This document shows positions 36,325-59,055 of a DNA stretch of 64,000 nucleotides, piece by piece. The position numbers were made by a program, and so were the translations under genes. The stretch covers positions 3,337 through 67,336 of the forward strand of contig NW_003314439.1 in NCBI RefSeq assembly GCF_000143415.4. Direction: 5' to 3'. Origin of the DNA: Selaginella moellendorffii (taxonomy: Eukaryota > Plantae > Lycopodiophyta). The stretch's first letter is position 1. The number at the start of each line of letters is the position of its first letter. Under the pieces are notes generated by a model. The model saw only the letters and a program-made list of their open reading frames with translations, was not told the origin of the DNA and made no database searches.

Positions 36325-36500
36325 TGTGAGGGCCAAGTGTACGGCTACGATGCCATATACTAATATTAGCATAATGGGATTTTAGTAGCCATCGGATTGA
36401 TTTCAATTTGGACCACTCATTCCTATATATAAACTAGAGTTTTTGGGCTAATTGATATGCATATTTTTTGTATTCCCTTTCCATATTCCAAGCACTCACA
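36325..36500 (+). repeat. 5' LTR of the gypsy element
   Basis: tgtgagggcc...gcactcaca; direct repeat of 42470-42645. Confidence 0.95.
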
Positions 36501-39852: not shown

Positions 39853-41586
39853 TGTAAGCGACTAATTTTTCCATTATACTTTAGTCACTTAACCACACCT
39901 TTGACCACTTGGAGGAGTCTCATTCACAACCTTCTGAAGTCCAATTCAGGACTTGGGACTTGCTAGCCTCGAGGATGGCATCTATGCCACTCATCCCTTG
40001 CACTTAGTCCAAGTGCTCCACATGTCCGGTCCCAAAACCGACACCCAAAGGTACCACTGACATATCGGCCCGTTACGCTAAGGCCATGCCCATTCACCTT
40101 TGCCGCACTAGTGGTCCAATACCACTTGCATCACAATCCCGTCTCTCCAAGACTGGGCCAACCATCTGTGAGTGGTCATCCCAGATCCACTCCTTAGCAT
40201 TGTTAGGATGCCTACCGACAAGGGGAACAGCTTTCCCCAATATCCCTCTGTCAGTCCCCGCTAGGTCCCTTTTTGCCCTTGGCTGTGTTTGCCAACACTG
40301 CCACTGGGTCGAGGCCCACAGGCTTGACCACTAAGTCCCATGGTCCTCTGGGACTTCCTCACCACATGACCATATCCTTGGCCACCACACCAAAGGACTG
40401 CTCCTTTTCCTTTCTATAGTCTGGGACTTGGGGACAACACTTCAGAATACTGTGGCCTTACGCGAGCCACTTGGGTACTCTCCCCGCCTTCCACCTTTGG
40501 GTGCTCTAGCCATGGGCTTAGAGCGAGGTTCCGTTGAGCCACGCCTGGTATCCAAGTAGGTAGTGCCACCCACACTTGGACTGGGAGCATCGGCCAGTCG
40601 ATCTCTCGGGGGAACTAGAGCCGGCTTTTGAACACTTCACCAAGCTACCCCGCTTGTTGGTCTGTATTCACTCTAGTCTTGTATTTCCCAGTGGTCAGTT
40701 CATCACCCAACACTAGGTCTGGCCCTTCCTAGGCCAAACTGGCCTTTCCTAGCCAAACTGGCTCCACTGCAGTCCTCCCCCTTACTATACTTTTGGAGCT
40801 CACCAAACCCCCCAGGGTCTAGGAGACGAACGCTTTGGGCTTTCACCCTCTCAGACTCGGACTCGGACTCGGACTCGGACTCGGGCTCGGGCTCGGTCTC
40901 GGTCTCGGCCTCCGCCTCGGTCTCGGTCTCGGTCCCGGTCTCAGCCTCGGTCTCGGTCCCGGTCTCGGTTTCGGTCTCGGTCTCGGTCCCGGTCTCGGTT
41001 TCGGTCTCGGTCCCGGTCTCCGTCTCGACCTCGGACTCCATCTCGGGTCCTTCTCGGACTCCATCTCAGATTCCATCTCAGGTCCATCTCGGACTCCATC
41101 TCGGTCCATCTCGGACTCCATCTCGAACTCCATCTCGGACTCCACTTCGGACTCCATCTCGGACTCCACTTTGGACTCCACTTCGGACTCCATCTCGGAC
41201 TCCATCTCGGACTCCACCTCGGACTCCACCTCAGACTCCATCTCGGACTCCAACTCGGGTCCATCTCGGACTCCATCTCGGACTCCACCTCGGACTCCAC
41301 CTCGGACTCCATCTCGAACTCCAACTCGGGTCCATCTCGGACTCCATCTTGGACACTTCTACGTGTCATGTGTTGGTCCTTTTGGGTCCCTTTTTGGAGT
41401 CTCACTTATTGCTCGCTTCGTGCTTGTTCCTTGAGCACTTTGTTGGGAGTTCCACTCCCACTCTCGACCTTCCAAGTCGAAGCTTTTAGTCCAAACGTGT
41501 TACGCTCGTTTGGCTTTCGCTTCGGCCACTACCACGTGGCACCCTTTCCAGCTCCACTTTGGGGCCTAGGGATTTTGTGTCTCATA
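39853..41586. mobile_element. Nested 1734-bp insertion, probably a solo LTR, inside the gypsy integrase
   Basis: Perfect 5-bp TSD GTTGG (39848-39852 and 41587-41591); ends TGTAAG...TCATA; removing it restores DYLTRW|VEVSAL. Confidence 0.9.
40850..41352. repeat. Compound minisatellite, (CTCGGW)n changing into (CTCGGACTCCAY)n
   Basis: 6-bp and 12-bp tandem units directly visible. Confidence 0.95.
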
Positions 41587-42469: not shown

Positions 42470-42645
42470 TGTGAGGGCCAAGTGTACGGCTACAATGCCG
42501 TATATTAATATTAGTGTAGTGGGATTTTGATAGCTATCGGATTGGTTTCAATTTGGGCCACTCGCTCTTATATATAAGTTAAGGTTTTTGGGCTAATTGA
42601 TATGCACATTTTCTGTATTTCCTTTCCATATTCCAAGCACTCACA
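42470..42645 (+). repeat. 3' LTR of the gypsy element
   Basis: Follows the PPT; about 88% identical to the 5' LTR by manual alignment. Confidence 0.95.
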
Positions 42646-42948
42646 TAGATAGATATATATTTATACCTATATAAAATATATAAAAATTTAAATTATAATA
42701 AAGTAAAATTTAATTTAATTTAATACATAATAAAATATATGCTAAAAATACTTTGAAAGACTTTTATACCCTTTGAATACACCTTTTTTTAAAGGTTTTT
42801 TTTAAAAATGATATCCTCAGGAATCCATCCAAGTTCTAAAAACATGCTCAACATATCAATTATTTACTTTTTCATATCTAATTATTTTTTCTCTTTAAAT
42901 TTTATCAATTTAAAATAAAATAAAATATATAATTTATAATAAGTTCTT

Positions 42949-43728: not shown

Positions 43729-45963
43729 ATGCAGCTTCTCCGGGCGCTATGGCTTCTCTCTGCGCTGCTGTTGCTACTCCTATTGCCGCTTGGGATTCAC
43801 GGCTTGGAGAGCGTCGATCGCGATGCTCTAGAGGAAGAGGATTTGGATCTGGAAGACGAGGATCTCGACACAGTGGAAGGCCCCAGGAGCGATGTGGCTA
43901 TGAATTTCGTGGCCGATCTCACAGATGAGAGCGCGCCGCGCGTGATTTCGTCGCGGGAGTATGTTCTTCTTCTAGGGTACGCGAGCTGGTGTAGCAGGAG
44001 CGCGGCGCTGCTGCCGGAATTCGCAGCAGCAGCATTGGATCTTGCTGGCTATGGCGATGGCAATGGCGCCATTGTCTTTGCCAAGATCGATGCCATTGCG
44101 AATCCAAAGACCGCCAAGCTCTACAATATCAAGGGATTCCCGACAGTGCTCTTCTTTGTCAATGGATCTGTCCAGCAAGCATACTCGGGAGGTGACTCTA
44201 AGTCGGTAAATTTTCCTCTTTCTCGTTCTTTTTGTTCTTCCTCTTTCATGCTCTAAACTAAAAAGAGATTTTTCTGACCAGGGAGGAGATTATCGACTGG
44301 GTGAGAAAGAAAACTGGCTCGCCAGCCTCTACAGTGGTCTCAACGAAAGACGCGGAAAATTTTCTCGCGAATAGTTCTGTCATTGTGGCCGGATTTTTCG
44401 ACAAATTTGAGGTGAGCTTTGTCCTCCTGCTTACGTAGTTTGCTGGATTTATCAAGTTTTGTCCAGGGAGATGACTACAAGAGCTTTATCGGAGCTGCAA
44501 AGCAGGAAGTTGGCACACCGTTTATCCAAACAAACAGCCTCAATGTGGCGCAGACATTTCATTCGAGTATTCGTAAACCACCGATGGTGTGGATACAGAA
44601 GAATGAGCCCGAGTTTTATGTTCCTTTCGGTAAGACCAATTCTCAATCTTCATTCTCAATCGAGACAAATGCTTGTTTCAGATGGAACTTTTAGTGCACA
44701 AAATCTCCTGGATTTTGTCGAGCTCAACAAGTTCCCTGTCGTTGTAAGGATGACGTCTAAGAATGCTGCCAGAATAAACTCCAGTCCTCTTAAGCTTCAG
44801 GTTTGATTGTTTTTTTCCTTTGCGTGTCATTTTCAAATCCCTGTGCAGGTGTTACTGTTTGCAAATGAAATCGACGTGAAAACTGTGTTGCCTCTGTTTG
44901 AGGACGCTGCAATGGCATTCAAGGGCAAGGTACTGTGCTTTGAGTCTGTTAAAAAGTTCTTGAGAGCTAGCTTATCCTTTCGCAGTTGATCTTTCTCGTG
45001 GTAGAAAACAGTGACATAGACTTTGCAATGCCATTTCTCTCGATGTACGGGGTTCAACCTGAGAAGCCTGTTGTGAGTTTTGATCTCGTTTTGTCATTTC
45101 ACATTGTATCTAATACGGCCGTACAACAGATCGTTGCCTTCAACTATGACAATGGCCAAAAATTTCTTCTGGAGGAAGATATCAATCTGCAGAACATTCT
45201 GGTTCGTAATGATAGTATATTCACGAAGTGTTGCATTTCTAACAGCATTGTATGTCCAGGCTTTCTGCCAGAATTTGTTGTCTGGAGATCTTACACAACA
45301 CTATAAATCAGAGCCTATCCCTTCCAAGGTACTGAGACTTTAATCGTGGTTGTCTTGACGGTCGTGGATTTGTGCAGGACGAGAGAGATCTACGAATTGT
45401 TGTTGGGAAAACGTTCGAGAAGATTGTTCTTGATGATTCCAAAGACGTCTTTCTCCAGGTTGGATGTTTTCTTATTTTTACGTCCACTCTTTTGTCTAAG
45501 AGGCTCATGCTTTCGATCACAGATAACTAGCCCATGGTGCGGAATGTGCGAGACAGCCAACAAAACAGTAGCTAAACTCGCGACGTTTTTCAAAGGCATT
45601 CCATCCCTTGTCATAGCGCAGATTGACGCATCTTCAAATGAGCACCCCAAGCTAGAGGTAATATTTTCAAAGTGTAGCCTATTCTTGTTTCTCACCTTCG
45701 TTTTTCCCTTGATAGGTGACGACTTATCCAGCATTTTTGTTCTACCCCGCGGGCCAGAAAAACCAACCTGTAAGTCCAATTCCCTTTTACAAACTCGGTG
45801 TAACTCCTTGCCACAGATCACCGCTCACGCAAAGACAAACTTAAAAGGCCTGGTCCAGTTTGTGAAGAAACACGCAGCCATTCCTTTTGCAATGCCAACG
45901 ACACAGCACACCAAAACCAAAACGAGCTCTACATCATCACCCCCTGATAAAGACGAGCTGTAG
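43729..45963 (+). CDS. Protein disulfide isomerase-like protein, PDIL1-5/1-6 type
   Basis: Signal peptide, acidic segment, active sites WCSRS and WCGMC, KGFPT, KSEPIP, C-terminal KDEL. Confidence 0.93.
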
Positions 45964-47284
45964 CGAAAACTCCAACGCTGCAATGTGGTAAATAGCAAAG
46001 CTGCTCTCCGGTAAGACGAGAGAAGCGGTAAGCTAAACGACAAGCATAGCTTTTTGTTTCTTCCAAGCTTGAACAGTGGTGTGAGTTACTGCTAAACACT
46101 TACTTCCAGAGAACGCTTACTTCAATTTGTTTTTAATTCCTCCAGAAGAAGCATGATAGTAAACTCCCGAGCATGCTCGCGTACAGGAGCTCGAGTCGCT
46201 GCTCAATCAAAGGCTTTTGCAGTTCACTGCATTCGCAAGATTAAGGACTTCGTCACAGCTGCGAAGATATAAGGTGTCCGAGATAATGGCTTGGATCTCC
46301 AATGAGGAAGAAGGAAACTTCTGATATCTTTCAACCTCCATAACCTTCAGCATAAACATTTAAGAACATATAGCCTCCAATCGTTAGAGACAAAAGCCTT
46401 ACCACACTGTGCTTATCAAATCTTAATGAAGGAAAGTTTTGCTCTAGCTCCAATGCTGCTTAGTTGAGGAGTGCTTGGCAGTGTCACCATAGCTTCCACA
46501 AACGTCCCTCCCATTGCCCCTTTTGCCAGTCGACCGGGATTTAGAAGCAACGTAGTGAGCTTCTCTGTGCGTGGCTAGCTTCACACCAGGCGTGTAGCTT
46601 AAAGACTGCAAAAGAAAAACCACGAAAATCACGTCAGTGAGATACTTGAAACTTCTACCTTGACGAAAGGGACCAAGTCCGACGATAGAACGATGATATC
46701 TGGCGTGCAAGGGAAGTCCAAAGCGCTGGGATTGACAGCGAGGTTCAAACAAGTGCCTAAAGCTGGCGGAAACAATGGATAAAAGCTGGACGAAAAGCAA
46801 TACAAGAGTCAGTGTTAAGGTAGATTTTTGGAGCAAGCTTTTGATACCCTCTTTGGCCAACAAGCTGTGCTCCCAGCCTCGACATTCTATCGCTGGAGGT
46901 GCCCGGTGGATTTCGAGCCGCTTCTTCACTGCTTAGATGTCGAAGGATATCTGTTGTGCAGCAGCCAATGGATACCTCATCCAGGCGAAACACACTTGGA
47001 TTCGGCAGTAGAGATATCTGGAAAATGCGACCAAAACTTAGTCTGAGAAAACAGATTTTTTAGGTACCTGCTGGGATGAATCTTCAAACATGAAACTATT
47101 AAAAGGAGGCTGCCAGCAGGAAAAAAACAAAAGTTAAGAGATTGAGAAACTCATCGGTGAGAGTACCTGAGGAAAAATTCGATCGTGAAACACGTCGCGT
47201 GTGGAGGGAATCAGTATAACCCTCGCCCCTGCTCCTAGAAACTGGCAGTAATCCTCTAGCTATACACATTGAGAAACCGTGAAT
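45726..47284. repeat. Segmental duplication copy A (PDI 3' end plus POLA2 3' end)
   Basis: Near-identical to 55474-57015. Confidence 0.95.
46416..47284 (-). pseudogene. POLA2: POLA2 pseudogene, 3' part (continues at 50380-50631)
   Basis: Duplicate of 56141-57015 with an 11-nt frameshifting deletion near 46577; interrupted by an insertion. Confidence 0.88.
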
Positions 47285-48054
47285 GGCCAAATAGGTGCGT
47301 TAGTTTTTGCGTTTCTTTTGTTTGGTTTGTGGATTGCCAAAGTTTTACTTCGACCGAGGGAATTTCTACGACTTCACTTCCTTGGGTGTGTGAGTTTGTT
47401 TTTTGCTCTAGATTGTCATCTGATACTTCCCTTTCGTGTTTTACAGTGAGGGAGCTCGATGTTCCGGGTGTGATTCACGAGAGGAAAATCTATCCTTTCG
47501 AGTTTTCGTCAGTGGAAATGCAGGCTCAGGTATACATTCACGGCTTGGATATTTTTTGTAATGGATTGTTTTGCCAGATATGTTCTTAAGGTGACTATAA
47601 CTCGCAGCTACGTACCTAAGATTGTGGAATACTGGGTAATGAGATACTTGTGGAGAAACATTCATCGCTCTTACGCTTTGTTTTTACCAGGTTCAAAAAC
47701 TTCTAGTGCACCCCGACGTGAACAACAGTATCAAGGTGAAAACTTCGATAATTTTCTTTTTAAAAAAGGTTTTTCTCTTTGTCGGCATCGAGGATTGCTT
47801 GCATATCGAATACGAGTACAGTAAGAGCAAGTGCGTTTCGAATACGTGGAAACATGCTTTGTGTCAACTGAGCGTGAGTGCTTTTTCTGTGCCAGATTCC
47901 ACTTAAAGGATGTAATCGTCGGGAAGATTTACTTTCTTCTGGTCCGCATATCGAGATTAGAAAGTGCGAGTCGACCGGCTCAGGTGCCAACGCTTACAAC
48001 AAAAGTGAAACACTTGCAAAGTTCGAAATCATGGATGGAGTGCCTGTCCGTGGT
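47285..48054 (+). pseudogene. VPS26: VPS26 (retromer subunit) fragment, middle exons with introns
   Basis: GQI|..YFDRGNFYDFTSL|VRELDVPG..YPFEF..YVLKVTI..NNSIK..VGIEDCLHIEYEYSKSK|FHLKDVIVGKIYFLLVRI..ETLAKFEIMDGVPVRG. Confidence 0.9.
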
Positions 48055-48064
48055 GAGAACTTCA

Positions 48065-48348
48065 AGTCTTCAAGAGCATCGGATCTCAGCACAGACGTGT
48101 ACACGCACCTCTGCTTTGCGTTCGCGAGTGTCAACAGCACAACTTTCTGGGTGGAAATCCCGGTGGAGAACATCGATATCGCGCGACAGTGTACGAGCCT
48201 GGTCAGGAGCAAGAATCCGCTCATCAAGACCCTCCTCTCGATAGGTGGCGCCGGGGCCAACACGACGTTCTTCTCGCAGAGGGCGAGCAACAGTTCCAGC
48301 AGGGGCGAATTCGTGCGGAGTAGCATTGCCTTGGCACGAAGTTACTGG
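48065..48348 (+). pseudogene. GH18 (class V) chitinase fragment
   Basis: YTHLCFAFA..KNPLIKTLLSIGG..SRGEFVRSSIALARSY; ends before the catalytic DxDxE motif. Confidence 0.85.
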
Positions 48349-48504
48349 TAAGTTAACACTATCTTCCGGAGTTCTTGGAACAATAGATCTAACTTTGTGT
48401 GATCACTTTCCGGCATGGGTACGAATCACCCATTCGTACACGTATACACGCCACATCAACAGTGACATGTCATCAAAGATTAGAGTTAGGGTGGCACATT
48501 AGCA

Positions 48505-49864
48505 GTGGGAAATGGCATGTGTGTGTGCGTCAGATGTAGTAGCAAGGGCGCTAGAAAAGAGGAAAAGCTCAGAAGTAGAAGAAAAGCAGATTGTCCAGCT
48601 TCTCAATGGTTTCAAGCTCAAAAACGACAAAAAAGTGGAGGCAAAACAGGAATTGAAGGACTGAATGAAGGATTCAAGCACACAGTTGTAAGGTACCTAC
48701 AAGTAAGTGCGTCAGGGGTTGGCCATGGGCCCTTTATTGTTGCAGAGACTGTGTCCTATGGCTCTTGGGAGATCTGGTCTCTTTCAATGGAGACTTGTTG
48801 GAGATTAAGATTCTTTTACGAGCTCAAGGGAGGAGAGTTTGGGACAGTTTATCTCTTCGGTGACCCTTCCAGTTTGCATGAGGCAACAGCTTCGTGGTTT
48901 GTTCTAGAAGTGGCGGAACAAGCAGCTAACTTCTTTGTGACTCATTTTCCAGCAAAGGATGTGCCAAGGTTCTGTGAATTGGTATTTGTTGTAGGCAGCA
49001 CCACTTTTAAGTTAGTAAATGGATCTCACAAAGAACTAAACGTCCTTTTCGAATATATCTAACTTGAACACTTTGGTGCAAAGGGCATTAAGGATGTGGT
49101 GAATAAGATGGGGACACCCAGTCTCAATTGCTATGGATCCTTGGCCGGAAGGGCTGGCTTGGGCGCACTGCCAAGTGTGGGGGATGCACCCGGGGTCATA
49201 ATCAACAATTTAAAAGGGTCTGGAAGACCTAGTACCTATTAGCAGAGTACTTAAGGTGTGCTATCAAGGTTGTATACAAAAATAAGAATGTGGAAACGCT
49301 CAAAGCAAAGTGGGAACAAGTTAGATGCCATTTGGCGGTTGGGATTAAAATTGAGTCAAAGAGAATTTCAAATGCTCTACATGTCAAACTTAATTGCTTC
49401 TGGAAAGAAGCTAAGAAGAGGCTCAAAAACAGTCCGAAAGTGTGCTCCAAGGATAATAGAGACAAATTCCATTTGAAGTTCCTGTTGAGCTAGTTGTTTG
49501 CAAATGTTGAGCCGAAGCATGACTTTCTCGTGGAGTGGGATCTCTATGAACTCCAAAAGCACATTATGACTGCCCTCTTCAGAGAGTACCAGGGGAACAA
49601 GATCATTATTGACGGGCTGCCAATGAACCCCAAGATCGATGACAAGCTTTATTGTAGCTGCTGGGGGAGAGACGATGGGAGAAAAATGATTCTCTATGAC
49701 AATGCCAAGGTAAGTTTTCATTATAATTGCTAGAACTAATTCTTTGGTTTTTGCAGTGTAAGGTTGGATGGTACCATTTGGATTGTGTGGGGTTTGCGGA
49801 CGATGAACCACTTGATGACGTCATCTTCTACTGTCAACAGTGTCTAGCTATAATGTGGAAGTGA
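48505..49864 (+). pseudogene. Decayed Uma2-like nuclease-PHD finger gene
   Basis: GPFIVA..CWRL..GDPSSLH, VVYKN..LAVGIKI and VEWDLYELQKHI align with the 51232-51957 protein; followed by LYCSC..MILYDNAK|CKVGWYHLDCVG..YCQQC; contains stops and frameshifts. Confidence 0.75.
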
Positions 49865-50109
49865 GGCGAGGACTCAAAATACACTGAAAATTCGTTCCAT
49901 GCATAGGTGGCGGAGATAGATATGATCAAAGAGTGAAACTCTATACTTCTTCCTAGAAAGACAAACCTTAATGTTCTGAACGTACATGATAAAAGCACAT
50001 TAGCCCTAGATGCTTCGAATATTCTCTATTTCTGTGAGCTAGAGTGCGAAAGAGCAAGGGCACGAGAGGGCGGCAGCAATGCAGAGCCTCTTCGTGGGAG
50101 CATTTGGTC

Positions 50110-50372
50110 AGCTGTGTGTCATCTCGATCGATCTCTCCGACATGGAGTCACGCAAGCAGGTCTGAACTGTGCCTTTGCTCTTTCTTAATCTTTGGTCTTT
50201 CCCAGGCGAGCATCAAGAAGGAGAATGGCCAAATAGGGATGGTTACTGCCGTGTTACTGGCGAGGGTGGTTGGATCATCCTTGTTTCCCAATTTTTAGTA
50301 ATTCTTTTTTTTCTGTTTAGGTGCGTATCGATCCCCTTCCCGGCCGGAAATCGAGCATCAAGGACTGAAATA
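50110..50372 (+). pseudogene. VPS26: VPS26 fragment, N-terminal exons
   Basis: CVISIDLSDMESRKQ|ASIKKENGQ..|VRIDPLPGRK..EHQGLK with GT-AG introns. Confidence 0.8.
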
Positions 50373-50379
50373 CTCTACC

Positions 50380-50631
50380 AACTCTATCAGTGATTCCCTG
50401 CTTGACGTGGGGATGCTCGGCATCAAAAAATAGTCCCATCTAGCAAAAGAGAGAGTAGAACACATGAATATCCATCTATATAAAATTCTCTCACCAGCAA
50501 TAGAACGTTTGGTCTTTTATTCCTAGCGTAGGCTAGTAACTCCATCAAAGGCTCAAACGAAAGGTTGTCACTTGTTGTAAAAGGACCTGACGCAACAATC
50601 TATAAACGCAAAGATTAGTCAGCCTCACTGC
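50380..50631 (-). pseudogene. POLA2: Displaced internal piece of the POLA2 pseudogene
   Basis: Near-identical to about 57089-57341. Confidence 0.9.
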
Positions 50632-51231
50632 AAATGGAGGATAGTAGGGATTGTGGCGTTTGAGAGTTCGACCCCTCGGTGGACTGTGAATGCCGCAGCC
50701 GGGCATTTGGTGCGGAGACGATCTCAGAGGAGGGCGGGTTCCAGAAGAGCGATTTGGCGTCGAGGAGGGCGTCGCTCTTAGCATTGGAGTGGGAGGTGAT
50801 CGCCGCGGGGCTGCAGGAGGCAGATTTATGGACGACCTTGGAGAGATTTGACAGAGACCTGGAGCAAGTTGTGAACTTGGTCGTACCAAACAACGGAGAA
50901 AACACGATCTAACTAGGAAAAGCAAAAGCAGAAGCTTACCATTTATCTAAGGGTACTACGCTGCAGCCGCGAGCCAACCTTGTGCTGGACCATTGCGGAG
51001 GCGAGGTGATGAGCTCAGCAGGGTGGCAGTCGTTCTTTTTGTTTGGAACGCAGAAGCAAAGAGCTCCAGACACAAAGCTCAGTTGGGTTTTGCTCTCTCG
51101 ACACTTCCTAGTTCTTCTCCATGCCACAAATCTCTGTCGTGCAAGTCCAACCTATCCTCTTTCCTCTCTTGCAGCAGCGTATTGCTAAGATATTTTTGCT
51201 CGATCTCACTTTTTGATTGAAATTCTAGGAT

Positions 51232-51957
51232 TTACAGCAGAGACTCCTGCTCAAAAGCTTGACGCTCTTGCTCGATCATACGAACTATATACTGCTGCAA
51301 CCAAAACAGATCAAACTCAACGTAGTAGTCACCCTTCACATCAGCAGTGAAAGACGACACTGGAAACTTCACCACAAAGAGCTCTCGATTCTGCTCGTTG
51401 CAAAACTCAGGCCCAAACTGGATCTCCATCGCATCGTTGCCTCTCTCCCTGGCTACAAACGTAAACTCGTCACCAGGCCGCGCAATCTTCACCCCGATCG
51501 CCACCAAGCAGCCCGACTCCACCCACAGATCCAAAACCTCCCTTAAAACTTCCAGTGGCTCGTTCTTGTACGCCACCTCCAACACCGCCCGCGCTGGCTG
51601 CGCAAGCGACGACCCAGAGAAGAAGCAAGCGTCCGGTTCCTTGTCGCCGGAGATGGTCCGGAGGCGAGATGCTCCAGCGCCAGTGATCACTTGTGGAAGA
51701 GAGGCTAGACCAATGCCCGGAATCTGGATGATGTGAAAGATGATGGAGCGCTCTAGCGCAGATGACACGGTGCTGTGGACTATTGACGGATCCCCATAGG
51801 CCAAAACCTCACCCCTCCTGTACTCTAGCCTCCAAGTCGAGTCGCAGCTACACATCCAGGCGTGGTACACCACCCATGGGACATTTGTGGCCACGAGAAA
51901 TGGCCCCGGCTGCCCTCTGCTGTAGGCGGCAATCGCTTGCTTCGATAAACCGTCCAT
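51232..51957 (-). CDS. Intronless Uma2/DUF820-like PD-(D/E)XK endonuclease-fold protein (241 aa from the ATG at 51957)
   Basis: RLEY..GE, PS..H, KEPD and VLEVA motifs in the order typical of Uma2-family proteins; uninterrupted ORF. Confidence 0.75.
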   Translation of the reverse strand: MDGLSKQAIAAYSRGQPGPFLVATNVPWVVYHAWMCSCDSTWRLEYRRGEVLAYGDPSIVHSTVSSALERSIIFHIIQIPGIGLASLPQVITGAGASRLRTISGDKEPDACFFSGSSLAQPARAVLEVAYKNEPLEVLREVLDLWVESGCLVAIGVKIARPGDEFTFVARERGNDAMEIQFGPEFCNEQNRELFVVKFPVSSFTADVKGDYYVEFDLFWLQQYIVRMIEQERQAFEQESLL

Positions 51958-51979
51958 GAAACCCTTAAGTTTTAGGGTT

Positions 51980-52162
51980 ATGGCGAGTGAAGCTCGACTC
52001 AAGGGGAATGGCCCATTCCAGCGGGGGGAATTCATCGACGCATATCATTGCTACAAAGTCAGCGCCAAACTAACTGTCATGGAGGAGAATTCATCGGCTC
52101 TTACTTTTACCCTCTCCAACGCATACTTAGAAGTGGGAAATTCTTTGCATTCAGGCATGTAA
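51980..52162 (+). pseudogene. Truncated TPR-protein N-terminus
   Basis: MASEARLKGNGPFQRGEFIDAYHCY..LSNAYLEVG resembles a TPR motif; stops after 60 aa. Confidence 0.45.
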
Positions 52163-52186
52163 CGCTCTTTCGATTGACAGGAAATC

Positions 52187-52240
52187 TTTAGGGAGAAAAG
52201 AAAGGGTTTAGGGTTTAAACCCTAAACCCTAAATCCTAAA
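52187..52240. repeat. Head-to-head plant telomeric repeats forming a 28-bp perfect palindrome
   Basis: agggtttagggttt/aaaccctaaaccct at 52203-52230, with flanking degenerate units. Confidence 0.85.
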
Positions 52241-52775
52241 CGATACAAGGCTCAGTCTTGGCGTTGTAGTCAACAAAAAGCGGGAGATGCTGTTCAGATG
52301 GAGGTCTGTGGATTCTGACTTGGAGCGTGAGATCCAATTCGGAACTGACTCTTGTCAAAGTTCCCAGGGCTTCGTCTACACGTTCCCAGCTCATTACTTC
52401 TCTATGGACTTGCCGGAGGGCTCGAGCTTTACATTCGACCTGTTTGACCTTCAACAACACGTCTTGTGTAAGCTCGACCAGCAGCTGGCTGCAAACCGTG
52501 CAGACATCGAGTCTCCACTTGTGGATGCGGCTCTGTACCGCACCATCTGTACTTGCAAGAAACGGGAGAGTGATCGAGGCAAGGTAATCACGTGCTGCTA
52601 CAGGGATTGTGACATCGTAAGGTTTCATTGCGAGTGTGTTGGAGTAAGCTCCCAGGGAGAGCTCCCGTACCCCTGGTTCTGTGACAACTGCGATCAAATC
52701 CGAGAGGACATCAAGGAACACGTAAGCAGGCAGGAGAAGAAAGAAGCTGGGCGAGATAAAACTTATCACAAGTGA
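52241..52775 (+). pseudogene. 5'-truncated Uma2-like nuclease C-terminus fused to an intact C4HC3 PHD finger
   Basis: EIQFG..C..FP..F..FDLFDLQQHV matches the C-terminus of the 51232-51957 protein; followed by CTC..CCYRDC..FHCECVG..WFCDNC. Confidence 0.75.
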
Positions 52776-52893
52776 TGCAAGTGATGGAGATTTTACTCCT
52801 TTGTTCTGGTTCTAATTGAAAGCTTACATTCTTTTCAACTACTATAAGTTTCATTCCCATTAGGGAGGTTTTCATTTGTTTCTCCAGGCGCTG

Positions 52894-55460
52894 TGTTAGA
52901 GCCACGTGGCGTACAGCCACCTGGCTTGAGTTGCATTCCTTCAGTTTAGGGCTTTCTTAGTTTTCTTTCCCATCCTGTGTGAGATCCATCCCAGGGGATT
53001 GTTCTGGGAGTGTTCTCATTCTCTATAGAGTGCTAGGCCATGAGGCTTGGCTTCTCTCATCATGGTATCAAAGCAATAGGTTAGATTTTTTATTTTTTTT
53101 TGGTATGAGTAGTGCCATAGATGCTAGGACAGGATGGCGTCTTTTTCTTCCTCCAAAGACATGGAGCAGTTCGATGGGACAAATCATCTTGCCTGGAAAG
53201 AACGTGCATAATTCTGGTTTATGAGGTGGGGATTCTAGCCTGTGTTATCTGGATTGAGAAAATGCCCGTCCAAAGACAATGATATACAGATCCATACAAC
53301 AAGTGGAAAGACCTGGATGCTAGAGCAAATGGAGCATTAGGAGGAGGACTTGGCCCTCTCTACAGTGTCCACGTGAATGTGGAGAAGAGTTGTACTGAGA
53401 ATTGGAAGTCAATTTGTGAAATTATGGGAGTGGACCTGCAAGAAGATGTGGGCGTGATTCTTTGTCGCAGTGAGCTATACAGTCTGGAGCAGTAGCCACA
53501 CAAGCGTGTGCATCAGGGATCCTGGTATCATCAGGGATCACATTCATCCCTAGCATCCAAGTCTTTCCACTCGCTGTATGGATTTGTGTCATCATCATCC
53601 TTGGATGGGCATTTTCTCAATCCAGATACCACAAGCCAGAATCCCCACCTCATAAACTAGAAGTGTGCACATTCTTTCCAGGCAAGGAAATTTTTCCCAT
53701 CAAACTGCTCCATGTCTCTGGAGGAAGAAGACAACGCCATCCTGTCCTAGCATCTATGGCACTGCTCATGCCAAAAAAAAATATAACTTATTGCTTTGAT
53801 ATCAGGTTCAGATACCAGAGGCTTGGACTGGGCAACGTCCACACATGGATATCTTATGGCAGTTTGGCTGTCTAGCTTTTTCTCATGTTCCTAATGAACT
53901 ACACAGGACATTGGATGTTAAATCCAAGAAGTGTGTATTTATGGGCTATAGTGATGAGCAGCGAGGATACTGACTCCTTCATCTAGACTCGGGAAAAGAG
54001 TTTGTGAGTTGAGATGTCATCTTTGATGAATCTCATGTGTATTTTCAACGTCACAAGGATCCAGGAGTTCCTTCTACAGGTTTTCTTTGTGGAGAAAGTA
54101 GGGCGAGCTCACAGCCTGTTTTCTTTCATCCATGGGAAGATGAGGAGGATGATCCTCTACCTCGACTGAGGTGGTTCCTGATCCTGAGCCCAGGAACGTG
54201 ATCAGGCTCTGGAGCTCGTGTCACAGCAGAGGTTGAAGCCCTGGCTGTGCTTATGCTCCAGCTGCAGGGGAAGCACAATATACCTGAACATGAGGATATG
54301 GTTCCTGAACCTGTGCATCACCGAGATCCTGATCTTATCCAGGTTTTGAGCCGCTCTGGTCGCCCTTTAACCTATACAGCGAGGGGTGGAGCTTATCAGT
54401 GAGAGCAAGCTGAGAAGCGAGCACGAGCAGCTGCTAGAGCTTCTTACATCAGAGTCGAATGGCTATATTCACAGCAGCAGAGGTGAAGATTCCTGCATGG
54501 GGTGATGCTATTGATGCTGAGATGTGAGCTCATGCAACAAATGAAACCTGGTATCTTCCTGATGAAGTTCCTGACAATGCTAATGTAGTTTCGACAAAGC
54601 TACTTTTCTGCGTGAAAGCTGGACCTTCAGGAGAAGTGCAGCGCTTTAAAGCTAGGCTTTACTCAGATCGAAGGCATAGACTTTACAGAAACTTTCAGCC
54701 CGGTCGTGAAGATGGCTTTTATCAGGCTGTTACTTGCTTTATGATCTTTATGTGGGGCAAATGGATGTGAAGACTGCATTTTTACATGGAGAAATTCCTG
54801 AGAAGGTTTACATCCAGCTCCTGACAGGCCTCGATCCGAGCCAAAGGATTTATCGGCTGAAGAAGGCTTTATACGGCCTGAAACAAAGTCCACGCATCTG
54901 GTATAAGAAAATTGATTCTTTTCTGATTTCTCTTGGATTCCAGAAAAACCATGCCAACTCAAACGTTTATATGAAGATTGAGGATGGTGCCTTGGTCATT
55001 TTGGCCTTGTATATGGACGATGGTATCTTTGTTTCCAACAACAGAGATCTTCTTGCTGAAATCAAGAGAAAGCTAGGAGCCCAGTTTGAGATGCAAGATC
55101 TTGGCCCCGTGCACACTTTCCTTGGGATTCAAGTTCAGCGACCACAGCCAGGACTTGTGACACTCTCACAACGAGCTTTGACAGGGGCAGCACAAGAGGT
55201 GAGCTGGCTTCGTGAGCTTGTAGGGAGTATGCAGTTAGGATAATCAATTGGTGATTGCTCTTTATGAGAATTTAAGATATCACACCAAGATGAAGCATAT
55301 ACAAATAAAATACCACTACATCATACATCAGAGAACAAGTGATGGGAGGAGAGTTGACACTTAAAAGTACATGGCAACTGAGGACTAGGTTGCTGATATA
55401 TTCACTAAGGCTCTTCCACCTATTATTTTCTGCAAACATCTAGAAGTGCTTGGAGTATGC
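52894..55460 (+). mobile_element. Degenerate, rearranged Ty1/copia retrotransposon lacking a 3' LTR
   Basis: Probable LTR tgttag..tcatca (52894-53062); tRNA-Met PBS tggtatcaaagc; KCVFMGY; RT motifs QMDVKTAFLHG, KALYGLKQ and LYMDD; RNase H ADIFTKALP. Confidence 0.92.
53063..53804. repeat. Inverted repeat with arms of about 265 bp (53063-53331 and 53541-53804)
   Basis: The second arm is the reverse complement of the PBS plus gag start (gtgccatagatgctaggacaggatggcg / cgccatcctgtcctagcatctatggcac). Confidence 0.92.
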
Positions 55461-55473
55461 GACCTGTCCTTGC

Positions 55474-55693
55474 ATCCAGCATTTTTGTTCTACCCCGCAG
55501 GCCACAAAAACCAACCTGTAAGTCCAATTCCCTTTTACAAACTCGGTGTAACTCCCTGCCACAGATCACCGCTCACGCAAAGACAAACTTAAAAGGCCTG
55601 GTCCAGTTTGTGAAGAAACACGCAGCCATTCCTTTTGCAATGCCAACGACACAGCACACCAAAACCAAAACGAGCTCTACAGACGAGCTGTAG
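55474..55693 (+). pseudogene. Duplicated 3' fragment of the PDI gene, ending TDEL
   Basis: Matches 45726-45963, with an internal deletion before GACGAGCTGTAG. Confidence 0.9.
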
Positions 55694-56140
55694 CGAAAAC
55701 TCCAACGCTGCAATGTGGTAAATAGCAAAGCTGCTCTCTGGTAAGACGAGAGAAGCGGTAAGCTAAACTACAAGCATAGCTTTTTGTTTCTTCCAAGCTT
55801 GCACAGTGGTGTGAGTTACTGCTAAACGCTTGCTTCCAGAGAACGCTTGCTTCAATTTGTTTTTAATTCCTCCAGAAGAAGCATGATAGTAAACTCCCGA
55901 GCATGCTCGCGTACAGGAGCTCGAGTCGCTGCTCAATCAAAGGCTTTTGCAGTTCACTGCATTCGCAAGATTAAGGACCTCGTCACAGCTGCGAAGATAT
56001 AAGGTGTGTCCGAGATAATGGCTTGGATCTCCAATGAGGAAGAAGGAAACTTCTGATATCTTTCAACCTCCATAACCTTCAGCATAAACATTTAAGAACA
56101 TACGAATCGTTTGAAACAAAGTCTTACCACGCTGTGCTTG

Positions 56141-59055
56141 TCAAATCTTAATGAAGGAAAGTTTTGCTCTAGCTCCAATGCTGCTTAGTTGAGGAGTGCT
56201 TGGCAGTGTCACCATAGCTTCCACAAACGTCCCTCCCATTGCCCCTTTTGCCAGTCGACCGGGATTTACAAGCAGCGTAGTGAGGTTCTCTGTGCGTGGC
56301 TGGGACTCGTCTAGCTTCACACCAGGCGTGTAGCTTAAAGACTGCAGAAGAAAAATCATGAAAATCGCGTCAGTGAGATACTTGGAACTTCTACCTTGAC
56401 GAAAGGGACCAAGTCCGACGATAGAACGATGATATCTGGCGTGCAAGGGAGGTCCAAAGCACTGGGATTGACAGCTAGGTCCAAACAAGTGCCTAACGCT
56501 GGCGGAAACAATGGATAAAAGCTGGACAAAAAGCAATACAAGAGTCTGTGTTAAGGTAGATTTTTGGAGCAAGCTTTGATACCTTCTTTGGCCAACAAGC
56601 TGTGCTCCCAGCCTCGACATTCTATCGCTGGAGGTGCCCGGTGGATTTCGAGCCGCTTCTTCACTGCTTAGATGTCTAAGGATATCTGTTGTGCAGCAGC
56701 CAATGGATACCTCATCCAGGCGAAACACACTTGGATTCGGCAGTAGAGATATCTGGAAATGCGACCAAAACTTAGTCCGAGAAAACAGATTTTTTAGGTA
56801 CCTGCTGGGATGAATCTTCAAACATGAAACTATTAAAAGGAGGCTGCCAACAGGAAAAAAAAACAAGTTAAGAGATTGAGAAACTCATCGGTGAGAGTAC
56901 CTGAGGAAAAATTCGATCGTGAAACACGTCGCGTGTGGAGGGAATCAGTATAACCCTCGCCCCTGCTCCTAGAAACTGGCAGTAATCCTCTAGCTACACA
57001 TTGAGAAACCGTGAATTGGTAGACAGCAACATATGAAGCAAAGAGTACGAACCCGTGTCGTTATCTCCTCTTGAAATACATGAGATAAAACTCTATCAGT
57101 GATTCCCTGCTTGACGTGGGGATGCTCGGCATCAACAAATGGTCCCATCTAGCAAAAGAGAGAGTAGAACACATGAATATCCATCTATATAAAATTCTCT
57201 CACCAGCAATAGAACGTTTGGTCTTTTATTCCTAGCGTAGGCTAGTAACTCCATCAAAGGCTCAAACGAAAGATTGTCACTTGTTGTAAAAGGACCTGAC
57301 GCAACAATCTATAAACGCAAGGATTAGTCAACCTCATTGCAAGCATTCCATGCAGACCATGTGTAGCGGTTGTGGTGTCTGGGTCTTCACTGTAAGATCC
57401 GTTGCTTGCCTCTTTGCAAGAGGATTATCATCCGGCGCCGAATGAGGAGGAAGTGGTAAAGAGTAAAAGATCCGGCTAGCAACAAGGCAATGCCCGCTCG
57501 GATTGTGTCCTTCCACCACAAGTATCTGGAATGCAAAATCGCACTTTGCGACGATAAAAGAAAACTCGAGTACCTGGCCCGGGAAAAGTGAAAACTGGCT
57601 TATCTCACGAAGATCCAAACGGACTCGATGCCCCCCAGAGTACTCAACGCTGTTTTAAGCTCTTGTTAGTGAAACAAGCTTAAACGAAATTAGAGCTCGC
57701 ACCTGCCTTCCAGCAAAACAGCGTTGGGATCTGCTTCTTCTGTATCGTAGCAAACTCTTCCAACAACGAGAATCTTTTCCTGAAACCATACGTCGATAAA
57801 ACTTGGAGCCATCACATACAGGTAACTCACCTGAGATGCATAGGCAACATGCTGCGACAGCGGCACAGATTCGTATTCTGAAAATGCTTGGACAAACTTT
57901 TTGATCCTTCTCTCGAGTTCGTTGAACTGCAGAACAAATTTTCAAAAGGACCGAACCTGGAAATAAGGGAAAACATTACCCTGCTTTCGACTTGATCAGC
58001 CATGTATCTGCAACCTGGCTTGAGCCCAGTGCTAAGCTCCTCGAGCTGACACCTTCTTACGTCTTTCAGCTTGCGTAGAACCAGATCTTCGGATTGCTGG
58101 ATATCATCCACTGCACTCGAACTAGCGTCGGGAAGGTGATCGTTGAAAACAAACTGGACAGTGCACTTGGTTGTACGTTGGCTGAAAGGCGTCGTCGGAC
58201 TGGGAACTTGTCTGGGAGTGACTTTAACCCGTGGTTGCGGCGGCGTAATGTATTGAGCTTCTCGAGAGCCTACCACTTTGTTGGGCGTCTTGCTATCCAC
58301 AAGCATTGCATCGCCAGTGAAGAATCTGTCCCGCTGTGATAAGTAAGCGTCGATAGAAAAAAAAGAGAACACGAACACTCTTACGTATCCAAATCATCCT
58401 TAGTGTAGATGTGCACCCCCCCATGCTCACGAATGAAATCGTTTCGCTGCTGAGTTTGTAGAAAAACTCGAAACTTGTCGATGTGAGAGTTTAGTAGTGT
58501 ATTTTTCTCCAGCTGCCTGAATCCATCCAAGCATTAGTATTCGTTTTTCCAAAGGGAAACAATTTGTCAACAAACTGAGGAATGAATCGTTATGAGAGCA
58601 TAAACACGGAAATAAAAAAAGGGAGGAAGAGACGAATAAAACAAACAAGGAACACTCTCACACAAACAAAAGCAAGGAAATCCACACAGTCACAAAAGAA
58701 TAGAGTGAAAAGAAATCCAAGGAAATCCACACACACACTCACAAAAGAATAGAATGAGCAAGGCACACGAAGGAAGAAGATCCACACACACTACTCACAC
58801 ATAATGCGAGGGAGAAAACCACTAGGAAAGAAGAAACTCACGAGTTGAGGTAGAACACCTCCCAGTGCTCCACTAGAGTCGAGGGCTTCAATCCAAAGCT
58901 CGAGCAAAGCGACACGCCTAAAGGAAGAAAAAAGATCCAACACGATCATGAGGAGAATGTAGCTACACTGGAGCGCACTTACATTGCCGGATGGTGTCCG
59001 CATTCTCCAGCGCGAAATTATTCTCCTGGAACACGCGCCCAATCTCTTCCTCCAT
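56141..59055 (-). CDS. POLA2: DNA polymerase alpha subunit B, multi-exon
   Basis: MEEEI..LKPSTLVEHWEVFYLN, SLFPGQ|ILVVEGHNPSG, GPF, LPNPS, SFYPLFPP, VNPGRLAKG..GGTF. Confidence 0.92.

What the first reader, a model, noticed from the sequence alone, without database searches (positions are those of the whole stretch)
47285..50379. Circularly permuted 3.1-kb insert in the POLA2 pseudogene, a possible eccDNA integration
POLA2 copy A breaks at 47284 and resumes at 50380, losing about 75 bp relative to 57016-57088. The insert begins in the last codons of a VPS26 exon (GQI|gt) and runs through the downstream VPS26 exons. It ends with the upstream VPS26 exons, stopping in that same exon at ..PGRK.EHQGLK, only a few codons before ELLGQI. 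Joining the two insert ends would nearly rebuild the exon. Inference: a DNA circle was opened within VPS26 and captured at a double-strand break. An alternative is a segment copied from a tandem array spanning one repeat unit.
Basis: partly seen in the sequence, partly recalled or inferred. Interest (0 to 1): 0.75.

Follow-up and report, generated by a model that had tools for sequence, protein, structure and literature searches.

The report
Rotated 3.1-kb gene-fragment insert, spikemoss
A dead, duplicated piece of a DNA-polymerase gene in the spikemoss Selaginella moellendorffii is split by 3.1 kb of foreign gene fragments in rotated order. This is the scar expected when a small DNA ring is captured during repair of a chromosome break; the ring's source could not be found.

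Summary
POLA2/PDI copy A (45726-47284 and 50380-50633) matches copy B (55474-57342) at about 95-98%. Copy A carries 3095 bp (47285-50379) where B has 72 bp.

The insert reads, on the + strand:
- the end of VPS26 exon 3 (GQI|gt) and the downstream VPS26 exons;
- one GH18 exon;
- a nearly whole Uma2-like nuclease + PHD gene;
- the VPS26 start codon, exons 1-2 and the start of exon 3 (..PGRK.IEHQGLK).

By comparison with plant VPS26 proteins, about four codons (IELL) separate the two insert ends. The introns are kept, and all pieces are dead.

The junctions look like break repair. There are no terminal repeats, no target duplication and no Helitron ends. Target DNA is lost, short microhomologies are present, and the right junction carries a small templated patch.

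Ends this close on a 3.1-kb unit are about 1% likely if a linear tandem array were copied, so a circular source is the best reading (about 0.6). Whether the ring was cut and ligated or copied once around is open; a 15-nt repeat at the left junction leans towards copying.

This scan has noted similar permuted inserts elsewhere in this genome. The mechanism is known from cattle, yeast and human, so this is a new member of a known kind.

The parts
45726..47284 (-). Copy A, left arm. It holds the tail of the PDI gene (+ strand, ends in KDEL) and the 3' part of a truncated POLA2 copy (- strand). It is duplicated at 55474-57016.
   Evidence: Self-BLAST gives 95.0% identity. Thioredoxin Pfam hit upstream.
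47281..47295 (+). Left junction and 15-nt exact repeat GAATGGCCAAATAGG. GAAT is also the POLA2 sequence in copy B. GGCCAAATAG|g is the VPS26 exon 3 end plus the first intron base. The same 15 nt occur at 50223-50237 in VPS26 exon 2.
   Evidence: 2 exact matches, 0.09 expected even when 2 mismatches are allowed.
47285..48049 (+). VPS26 from the last 10 nt of exon 3 through the exon ending ..MDGVPVR(G). Short GT-AG introns are retained. Several frameshifts and deletions are present, e.g. loss of the IKIKxM codons near 47950.
   Evidence: Pfam Vps26. tblastn with plant VPS26 proteins.
48050..48345 (+). Internal junction J1 (48050-48064), followed by one GH18 (class V chitinase-like) exon that ends at a gtaagt splice donor. 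The frame stays open across J1.
   Evidence: Pfam Glyco_hydro_18 at E = 1e-12, profile positions 10-104. No further GH18 homology downstream.
48346..48544 (+). Start of the GH18 intron plus unassigned DNA. It contains internal junction J2.
   Evidence: No Pfam or Rfam match. Homology to the closest Uma2-like paralogue starts at 48545.
48545..49864 (+). Uma2-like nuclease-fold gene with a C-terminal PHD finger. The gaps in homology at 49075-49244 and 49709-49757 are read as likely introns. There is an in-frame stop at 49491-49493.
   Evidence: 25-29% identity to the window's other two family members. About 70-84% identity to the C-terminus of SELMODRAFT_430862. PHD Pfam match at E = 7.6e-4.
49865..50078 (+). 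214 nt between the stop of the nuclease-PHD gene and the VPS26 start codon. A possible third internal junction (J3) lies here.
   Evidence: Read directly from the sequence. No repeat or RNA match.
50079..50370 (+). VPS26 exon 1 (from the ATG to 50161), exon 2 (starts at 50207, with a deletion of about 16 nt) and the start of exon 3 (50321-50370, VRIDPLPGRK / IEHQGLK, with a 1-nt deletion).
   Evidence: tblastn with plant VPS26 N-termini. Three-frame translation.
50366..50379 (+). Right junction. TGAAATAC equals copy B 57072-57079; its TGAAA overlaps the VPS26 codons for LK, giving 5-nt microhomology. It is followed by the 6-nt patch TCTACC, which replaces the 9 nt ATGAGATAA of copy B. With the next AA, the patch is the reverse complement of B 57016-57023. 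Alternatively, ACTCTA is a direct copy of B 57090-57095.
50380..50633 (-). Copy A, right arm (POLA2 3' half). It is duplicated at 57089-57342. The homology ends sharply at 50633.
   Evidence: Self-BLAST gives 97.6% identity. Boundaries shown.
55474..57342 (-). Copy B, uninterrupted. It is part of the full-length POLA2 gene, which continues to the right. 57017-57088 is the stretch missing or replaced in copy A.
   Evidence: Pfam DNA_pol_E_B (56141-56866) and DPOA2_OB (57334-57618). Alignment.

Best explanation
A chromosome break in the redundant, truncated POLA2 fragment (copy A) was repaired by capturing a small circular DNA of about 3.1 kb.

The ring was a mosaic of three dead gene pieces:
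- the 5' two-thirds of a VPS26 gene with its introns;
- one GH18 exon;
- a Uma2-like nuclease + PHD gene.

Either the ring was broken once inside VPS26 exon 3 and its ends were joined to the break, or a broken POLA2 3' end primed DNA synthesis on the ring by microhomology, ran about one lap and returned to the other POLA2 end. In both versions the joining was microhomology-mediated, polymerase-assisted end joining, which lost 55-72 bp of target and left a small templated patch.

Shown here: the rotation, the junction sequences, the lack of transposon ends, the retained introns and the dead state of all pieces.

Inferred: the ring itself, how it was built and which joining route was used.

The insert has no function. 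It is a repair scar in neutral DNA.
For: - **Rotation:** VPS26 residues about 73-215 lie at the left of the insert and residues 2-70 at the right, on the same strand. The two ends fall in one exon about 4 codons apart.
- **Odds against a linear source:** for a 3.1-kb unit, independent start and end points would fall within about 17 nt of each other only about 1% of the time (my arithmetic: 2 x 17 / 3100).
- **Repair-type junctions:** 72 bp of copy B are missing or replaced. There is no target duplication and no terminal inverted repeat. No CTRR/TC Helitron end or end-joint was found in or at the insert. The right junction has 5-nt microhomology (TGAAA) and a 6-nt patch matching flanking POLA2 sequence.
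- **DNA origin:** the DNA keeps short GT-AG introns and an intergenic stretch, so it came from DNA and not RNA.
- **Neutral target:** copy A lacks the POLA2 5' half, which is present only beside copy B.
- **Precedent:** rotated order as the footprint of circle-mediated duplication is described for cattle, yeast and human (PMC7188851). Chimeric multi-locus circles exist in plants (PMC10462705).
- **Organism:** the window is Selaginella moellendorffii. ORF 51232-52035 is 100% identical over residues 24-267 to SELMODRAFT_431954.
Against: - No donor locus was seen. None lies in the window, and the rest of the genome could not be read (look-up of encoding contigs closed). The linear order of the source and any ring-closing junction are therefore unknown.
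- The insert has two or three internal junctions between unrelated genes, and their origin is unexplained.
- The VPS26 piece is so decayed that the exact bases at the opening cannot be rebuilt.
- The 15-nt repeat and the complex right junction indicate template switching, which could also act on a chromosomal tandem array.
- Only one assembly was examined and no reads were checked.
- Earlier scan follow-ups on other loci warn that a tandem duplication plus later rearrangement can mimic circles.
Confidence: 0.6

Rival explanations
1. No ring was involved. The break was repaired by microhomology-primed copying (of the SDSA or MMBIR type) from a chromosomal tandem array of the unit [VPS26 5' part - GH18 exon - nuclease-PHD]. 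Copying started in one unit and ended in the next.
For: - Template switching is suggested by the 15-nt repeat (4 nt of POLA2 plus 11 nt shared by VPS26 exons 2 and 3) and by the patchwork right junction.
- This genome is rich in local duplications (and scan notes).
- Members of the nuclease-PHD family occur in clusters.
Against: - Start and end would have to fall about 12 nt apart modulo one unit by chance, which is about 1%.
- No such array lies in the window.
- An array of this kind would itself shed one-unit rings by recombination between units, so it is not a clean alternative.
Confidence: 0.2
2. The structure arose stepwise. Two independent insertions of different parts of the same VPS26 region landed at exactly adjoining points, or a non-rotated insert underwent a later tandem duplication and two deletions.
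For: The locus has been hit repeatedly. A 1.87-kb duplication flanks a 4.84-kb spacer holding copia pieces and two more nuclease genes. Copy A also carries about 9 other indels relative to copy B.
Against: - It needs two or three events with base-precise coincidences. The same argument is made in PMC7188851.
- No leftover duplicated insert sequence is seen.
Confidence: 0.07
3. A transposon (a Helitron or a Pack-type element) carrying captured gene fragments inserted here.
For: The insert is a co-oriented mosaic of intron-containing gene fragments. That is typical Helitron cargo, and Helitron capture is reported as common in this genome by scan notes.
Against: - There is no 5'-TC or 3'-CTRR end with a hairpin, at the ends or as an internal end-joint.
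- There are no TIRs and no target-site duplication. Instead there is a 55-72-bp target deletion with microhomology and filler.
- The insertion is not at an A|T dinucleotide.
Confidence: 0.04
4. The structure is an assembly artefact, with chimeric joins in the draft two-haplotype assembly.
For: Only one assembly was read. The public Selaginella draft merges two haplotypes (my own knowledge). A 96% twin of the neighbouring gene lies on another scaffold.
Against: - It would need two false joins that happen to frame one rotated unit.
- The 8-nt POLA2 island and the templated patch at the right junction look biological.
- The flanks diverge from copy B by about 4-5%, including right up to the junctions.
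Confidence: 0.04

Closest known systems
eccDNA-mediated (circle-mediated) duplication or translocation, described for cattle colour sidedness, yeast and three human cases (Takahashi & Innan 2020, PMC7188851)
   Same: A single inserted block has an internal order that is a rotation (efghij|abcd) of the natural order. Its two ends map next to each other. It was inserted at an unrelated site without transposon hallmarks.
   Different: - The donor locus is not identified here. The rotation is read from the exon order of one gene instead of from a donor-recipient dot plot.
- The ring is a mosaic of three unrelated gene pieces.
- The host is a lycophyte.
- The junctions carry microhomology and a templated patch that hint at copying and not simple ligation.
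Filler-DNA or ectopic-sequence capture at plant double-strand breaks, and T-DNA integration junctions (review PMC8395108; a role for polymerase theta is from my own knowledge)
   Same: Deletion of target bases, 1-5-nt microhomologies and short filler templated from nearby sequence.
   Different: The captured DNA is 3.1 kb long and circularly permuted. Classic filler is tens to hundreds of bases and co-linear with its template.
Chimeric eccDNA in Arabidopsis epigenetic mutants (PMC10462705)
   Same: Circles are built from pieces of different loci, so mosaic rings do exist in plants.
   Different: Those circles are transposon-derived and were observed as free DNA. That paper says re-integration is poorly described outside cancer cells, yeast and cattle. 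Here only the integrated scar is seen.
Helitron gene-fragment capture
   Same: A co-oriented chain of intron-bearing host gene fragments. Helitrons also pass through circular intermediates (my own knowledge).
   Different: No Helitron termini, hairpin or AT target were found, either at the ends or as an internal end-joint.

Membership tests
Circle-mediated (eccDNA) permuted insertion | The inserted block is a rotation of the natural order, and its two ends map to adjacent positions. | tested here: met
   VPS26 exon order: exon 3b through the exon ending ..PVR(G) on the left, exons 1 to 3a on the right, same strand. The ends are about 4 codons apart.
Circle-mediated (eccDNA) permuted insertion | A linear donor locus can be identified, with the ring-closing junction visible in the recipient only. 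| not testable with these tools
No near-identical annotated protein was found.
Circle-mediated (eccDNA) permuted insertion | The insertion junctions are not made by a transposase or integrase. | tested here: met
   No target-site duplication, TIR or LTR. The target is deleted, with microhomology and filler.
Microhomology-mediated or templated end joining (filler-DNA repair) | Loss of target bases, short microhomology at the joints, and filler templated from flanking sequence. | tested here: met
   - 55-72 bp of target are lost.
- TGAAA (5 nt) is shared at the right joint, and T or GAAT at the left.
- The 6-nt patch matches flanking POLA2 in inverse orientation (8 nt with the adjoining AA) or direct orientation (6 nt).
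- The chance level for the patch is about 4% by my estimate, so it is suggestive only.
Helitron | A 5'-TC end, a 3'-CTRR end preceded by a hairpin, and insertion between A and T. | tested here: not met
   The ends read AAT|GGCC and TACC|AACT. A scan for CTRR+T[C/A] with an upstream stem of at least 6 bp found nothing on either strand.
TIR transposon / Pack-type element | Terminal inverted repeats plus a target-site duplication. | tested here: not met
   No inverted repeat joins the two ends, and the target is deleted instead of duplicated.
Retrocopy (processed pseudogene) | Loss of introns, a poly(A) tail and a single transcript as source. | tested here: not met
   Short GT-AG introns are retained. 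Two genes and an intergenic stretch are present. There is no poly(A) tract.
Vps26 (PF03643) and Glyco_hydro_18 (PF00704) fragments | A significant profile match. | tested here: met
   The 157-aa ORF piece scores 34.4 bits against Vps26 (cut-off 27) and 48.8 bits against GH18 (cut-off 29.6). Both are fragments, and the VPS26 piece is frame-shifted, so neither is a working gene.

The most novel reading that the evidence does not exclude
Small mosaic DNA rings may be a recurrent route of gene-fragment shuffling in Selaginella, with the Uma2-like nuclease + PHD family travelling on such rings or even provoking them.

This insert brought in one family member and landed 0.85 kb from two distant relatives. 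Those relatives themselves sit in a 4.84-kb insertion flanked by a 1.87-kb duplication. The scan has logged dozens of 'permuted' notes in this genome.
Probability: 0.07. Interest if true: 0.8.

Novelty: new member of a known kind. Interest (0 to 1): 0.45.

Why it matters
Base-resolved scars of re-inserted DNA circles are well documented in only a few animal and yeast cases. The plant literature I read calls re-integration poorly described (PMC10462705). This locus gives readable junctions in a lycophyte, in neutral DNA where nothing was selected. It therefore reports on the repair mechanism itself: target loss, microhomology and a templated patch.

As a single event it changes no gene and is of modest interest. 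Its value would rise if a genome-wide count confirmed that such rotated inserts are common in Selaginella. That would make ring capture a measurable source of gene-fragment mosaics that are usually credited to Helitrons.

Tried and rejected
- **Donor in the window:** sensitive blastn and tblastx of the insert against the rest of the window found only a distant nuclease paralogue.
- **Protein searches for a near-identical annotated copy:**
  - The 190-aa nuclease piece gave no word-search hit.
  - The exhaustive representative search gave SELMODRAFT_430862 as best, at only about 70-84% identity and with no VPS26 or GH18 attached.
  - The VPS26-GH18 piece hit only plant VPS26 fragments at 81% identity or less and no chimera.
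- **Transposon ends:** no TIR, target-site duplication or Helitron signature. There were no Rfam hits and no tandem repeats in the insert.
- **More GH18 beyond the single exon:** none found.
- **Coding status of the lost POLA2 stretch:** short pieces gave no Pfam or PDB match. Its coding status rests on the open minus-strand frame and on my knowledge of POLA2.
- **Antisense VPS26-tail-like match at 52517-52660:** E = 0.003 with composition statistics off and two stops. It overlaps a real PHD-coding frame, so I judged it chance.
- I did not build or search a joined or spliced VPS26 model, or a model of the joined insert ends.
Full report
**Organism and setting**

The ORF at 51232-52035 (- strand) is 100% identical over residues 24-267 to SELMODRAFT_431954 of Selaginella moellendorffii. 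The window is therefore spikemoss DNA, not human. Earlier scan notes had said the same.

Self-comparison shows a 1.87-kb segment present twice:
- copy A is 45726-47284 plus 50380-50633;
- copy B is 55474-57016 plus 57089-57342.

Identity is 95.0% and 97.6%. There are about 84 substitutions and about 9 indels over 1.85 kb.

The segment holds the last exon of a PDI-type gene on the + strand, ending in KDEL. It also holds the 3' half of POLA2 on the - strand. Copy B runs on into the rest of POLA2 (Pfam DNA_pol_E_B at 56141-56866 and DPOA2_OB at 57334-57618). Copy A stops sharply at 50633.

Between A and B lie 4.84 kb. This spacer contains two more Uma2-like genes, a 196-nt inverted repeat and copia pieces.

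**The observation**

Copy A carries 3095 bp (47285-50379) where copy B has 72 bp (57017-57088). On the + strand the insert reads as follows.

1. GGCCAAATAG|gtgcgt, which is the end of a VPS26 exon (GQI).
2. Exons for ..FYFDRGNFYDFTSL, VRELDVPGVIHERKIYPFEFSSVEM.., RYVLKVTITR....NNSIK, VGIEDCLHIEYEYSKSK and FHLKDVIVGKIYFLLVRI..IEIRKCESTGSGANAYNKSETLAKFEIMDGVPVRG. They are separated by short GT-AG introns.
3. With the frame still open, a GH18 exon at 48064-48345 that ends at a gtaagt donor (Pfam GH18 E = 1e-12, profile 10-104; Vps26 profile 201-237).
4. About 200 nt of unassigned DNA.
5. A Uma2-like nuclease-fold gene with a PHD finger (48545-49864).
   - It is 25-29% identical to the two neighbouring family members.
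   - It is about 70-84% identical to the C-terminus of SELMODRAFT_430862.
   - It has an in-frame stop at 49491.
6. 214 nt of spacer.
7. The VPS26 start codon at 50079, exon 1, exon 2 (ASIKKENGQIGMV..) and the start of exon 3 (VRIDPLPGRK, a 1-nt frameshift, IEHQGLK).

Plant VPS26 proteins read ..IDPLHGKKVEHNGVKIELLGQIE|LYFDRGNFYDFTSL. The insert therefore ends at ..GLK and begins at GQI, four codons (IELL) apart in the same exon. The rotation is real.

Partial plant gene models that read through introns on either side of the ELYFDRGNFYDFTSL exon indicate that the intron after GQI is a conserved position.

The VPS26 piece is dead. It has a deletion of about 16 nt in exon 2, a 1-nt deletion in exon 3, a phase mismatch after GQI, a scrambled stretch after SVEM, and loss of the IKIKxM codons.

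**Junctions**

*Left junction.* POLA2 ..ACCGTGAAT is followed by GGCCAAATAGgtgcg. Copy B continues ..GAAT|TGGTAGAC.

The 15 nt GAATGGCCAAATAGG recur exactly at 50223-50237 in VPS26 exon 2 (KENGQIG). Eleven of these can be explained because GQI occurs twice in VPS26. The extra GAAT, which is POLA2 sequence, matches with a chance of 1 in 256.

*Right junction.* VPS26 ..CATCAAGGAC is followed by three elements:
- TGAAATAC, which equals B 57072-57079. Its TGAAA is also the VPS26 codons for LK, giving a 5-nt microhomology.
- The 6 nt TCTACC, in place of B's ATGAGATAA.
- POLA2 again, from 57089 onward.

With the following AA, TCTACC is the reverse complement of B 57016-57023, the bases just right of the left breakpoint. 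Alternatively, ACTCTA is a direct copy of 57090-57095. I could not find a simple snap-back priming scheme for the patch, and I estimate its chance level at about 4%. I treat it as suggestive templated filler.

Transposon hallmarks are absent. There is no target duplication, no terminal inverted repeat, no Helitron end or end-joint, no poly(A), and no RNA gene or tandem repeat in the insert.

**Interpretation**

Loss of target bases, microhomology and filler are the marks of end-joining repair of a chromosome break, as known from plant filler DNA and T-DNA junctions (PMC8395108). The retained introns and the intergenic DNA exclude an RNA origin.

The key feature is that one contiguous 3.1-kb block starts and ends about 12 nt apart in the same exon. 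If a linear tandem array had been copied with independent start and end points, this would happen about 1% of the time (2 x 17 / 3100). A ring opened at one point, or copied for one lap, gives it directly. This is the footprint used to call circle-mediated duplication in cattle, yeast and human (PMC7188851). Mosaic circles made from different loci have been seen in Arabidopsis (PMC10462705).

I therefore favour capture of a mosaic ring of about 3.1 kb (confidence about 0.6).

Cut-and-ligate versus copy-one-lap cannot be settled. The 15-nt repeat is explained if the POLA2 3' end (GAAT) annealed at exon 2, copied 11 nt and re-annealed at the exon 3 copy of the same 11 nt. The patchwork right junction also points to a switching polymerase. 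I lean slightly towards copying.

**What is missing**

- The source was not found. Nothing in the window resembles the insert.
- Protein searches found no near-identical annotated copy of any piece and no VPS26-GH18 chimera.
- The two or three internal junctions are therefore unexplained: J1 at 48050-48064, J2 within 48346-48544, and possibly J3 within 49865-50078. One of them may be the ring-closing joint, or all may predate the ring.
- I did not build or search a spliced or end-joined VPS26 model. Exons were compared singly by reference.

**Rivals**

- Copying from a chromosomal tandem array: 0.2.
- Stepwise events: 0.07.
- Transposon cargo: 0.04.
- Assembly error: 0.04.

**Context and novelty**

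This scan has already logged many 'permuted' notes in the same genome. They include a 28.5-kb insert in a UGT gene, a 6.9-kb two-donor insert in a POLH copy and a 1.5-kb AlaRS fragment. I did not check any of them. Some follow-ups warn that a tandem duplication plus rearrangement can mimic a circle.

This locus is thus another instance of a known mechanism, with unusually legible junctions and in a plant lineage where I found no published case. It alters no working gene.

One oddity remains. The insert delivered a Uma2-like + PHD gene next to two distant relatives of the same family. That suggests a local donor cluster or, less likely, that this family travels with such DNA.

Noticed in passing
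window 45726-57342: The 1.87-kb PDI-tail/POLA2-3' segment is duplicated around a 4.84-kb spacer (50634-55473). The working PDI gene uses copy A and the working POLA2 gene uses copy B. This looks like a large insertion flanked by a long duplication of the target. The boundaries are sharp.
   Followed up: partly
window 52205-52241: A head-to-head cluster of plant telomere-type repeats (GGGTTTAGGGTTT / AAACCCTAAACCCTAAATCCTAAAC) lies between the two divergent Uma2-like genes. Similar telobox pairs occur at 1904 and 16713. They are probably promoter teloboxes.
   Followed up: partly
window 52236-52775: Both strands are open over about 490 nt. The + frame encodes a Uma2 C-terminal part plus a PHD finger. 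The - frame is used by the public gene model SELMODRAFT_431954 as its N-terminus.
   Followed up: no
window 53088-53283 and 53591-53786: A 196-nt inverted repeat pair (88% complementary, 307 nt apart) lies just upstream of copia integrase/RT fragments (53663-55243; RVT_2 E = 3e-37).
   Followed up: no
window 40839-41354: A GC-rich array with a 12-nt period (about 30 units) reads as Glu/Thr/Ser-rich repeats on the minus strand.
   Followed up: no
window 2501-4347 vs 7635-10332; 19726-20197 vs 22395-22866; 36325-36501 vs 42470-42646: Further local duplications at 81-94% identity, one with an internal inverted piece (3335-3514 vs 9230-9040).
   Followed up: no
window 50337-50350: The near-palindrome TTCCCGGCCGGAAA (core CCGGCCGG) lies 15-28 nt upstream of the point where the VPS26 sequence of the insert ends. 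It is a conceivable fragile site for opening of the ring.
   Followed up: no
window 52517-52660 (- strand): A weak match (E = 0.003, two stops) to the missing VPS26 C-terminal tail (SPYELTPTH..RYFKQQEI..), antisense to the PHD-coding frame. Judged to be chance.
   Followed up: partly
P0068 (SELMODRAFT_430862, 332-kb contig): The closest relative found for the insert's nuclease gene is the C-terminus of a 1242-aa fused gene model. The first about 980 residues of that model are four copies of a Pro/Ala-rich repeat of about 190 aa.
   Followed up: no
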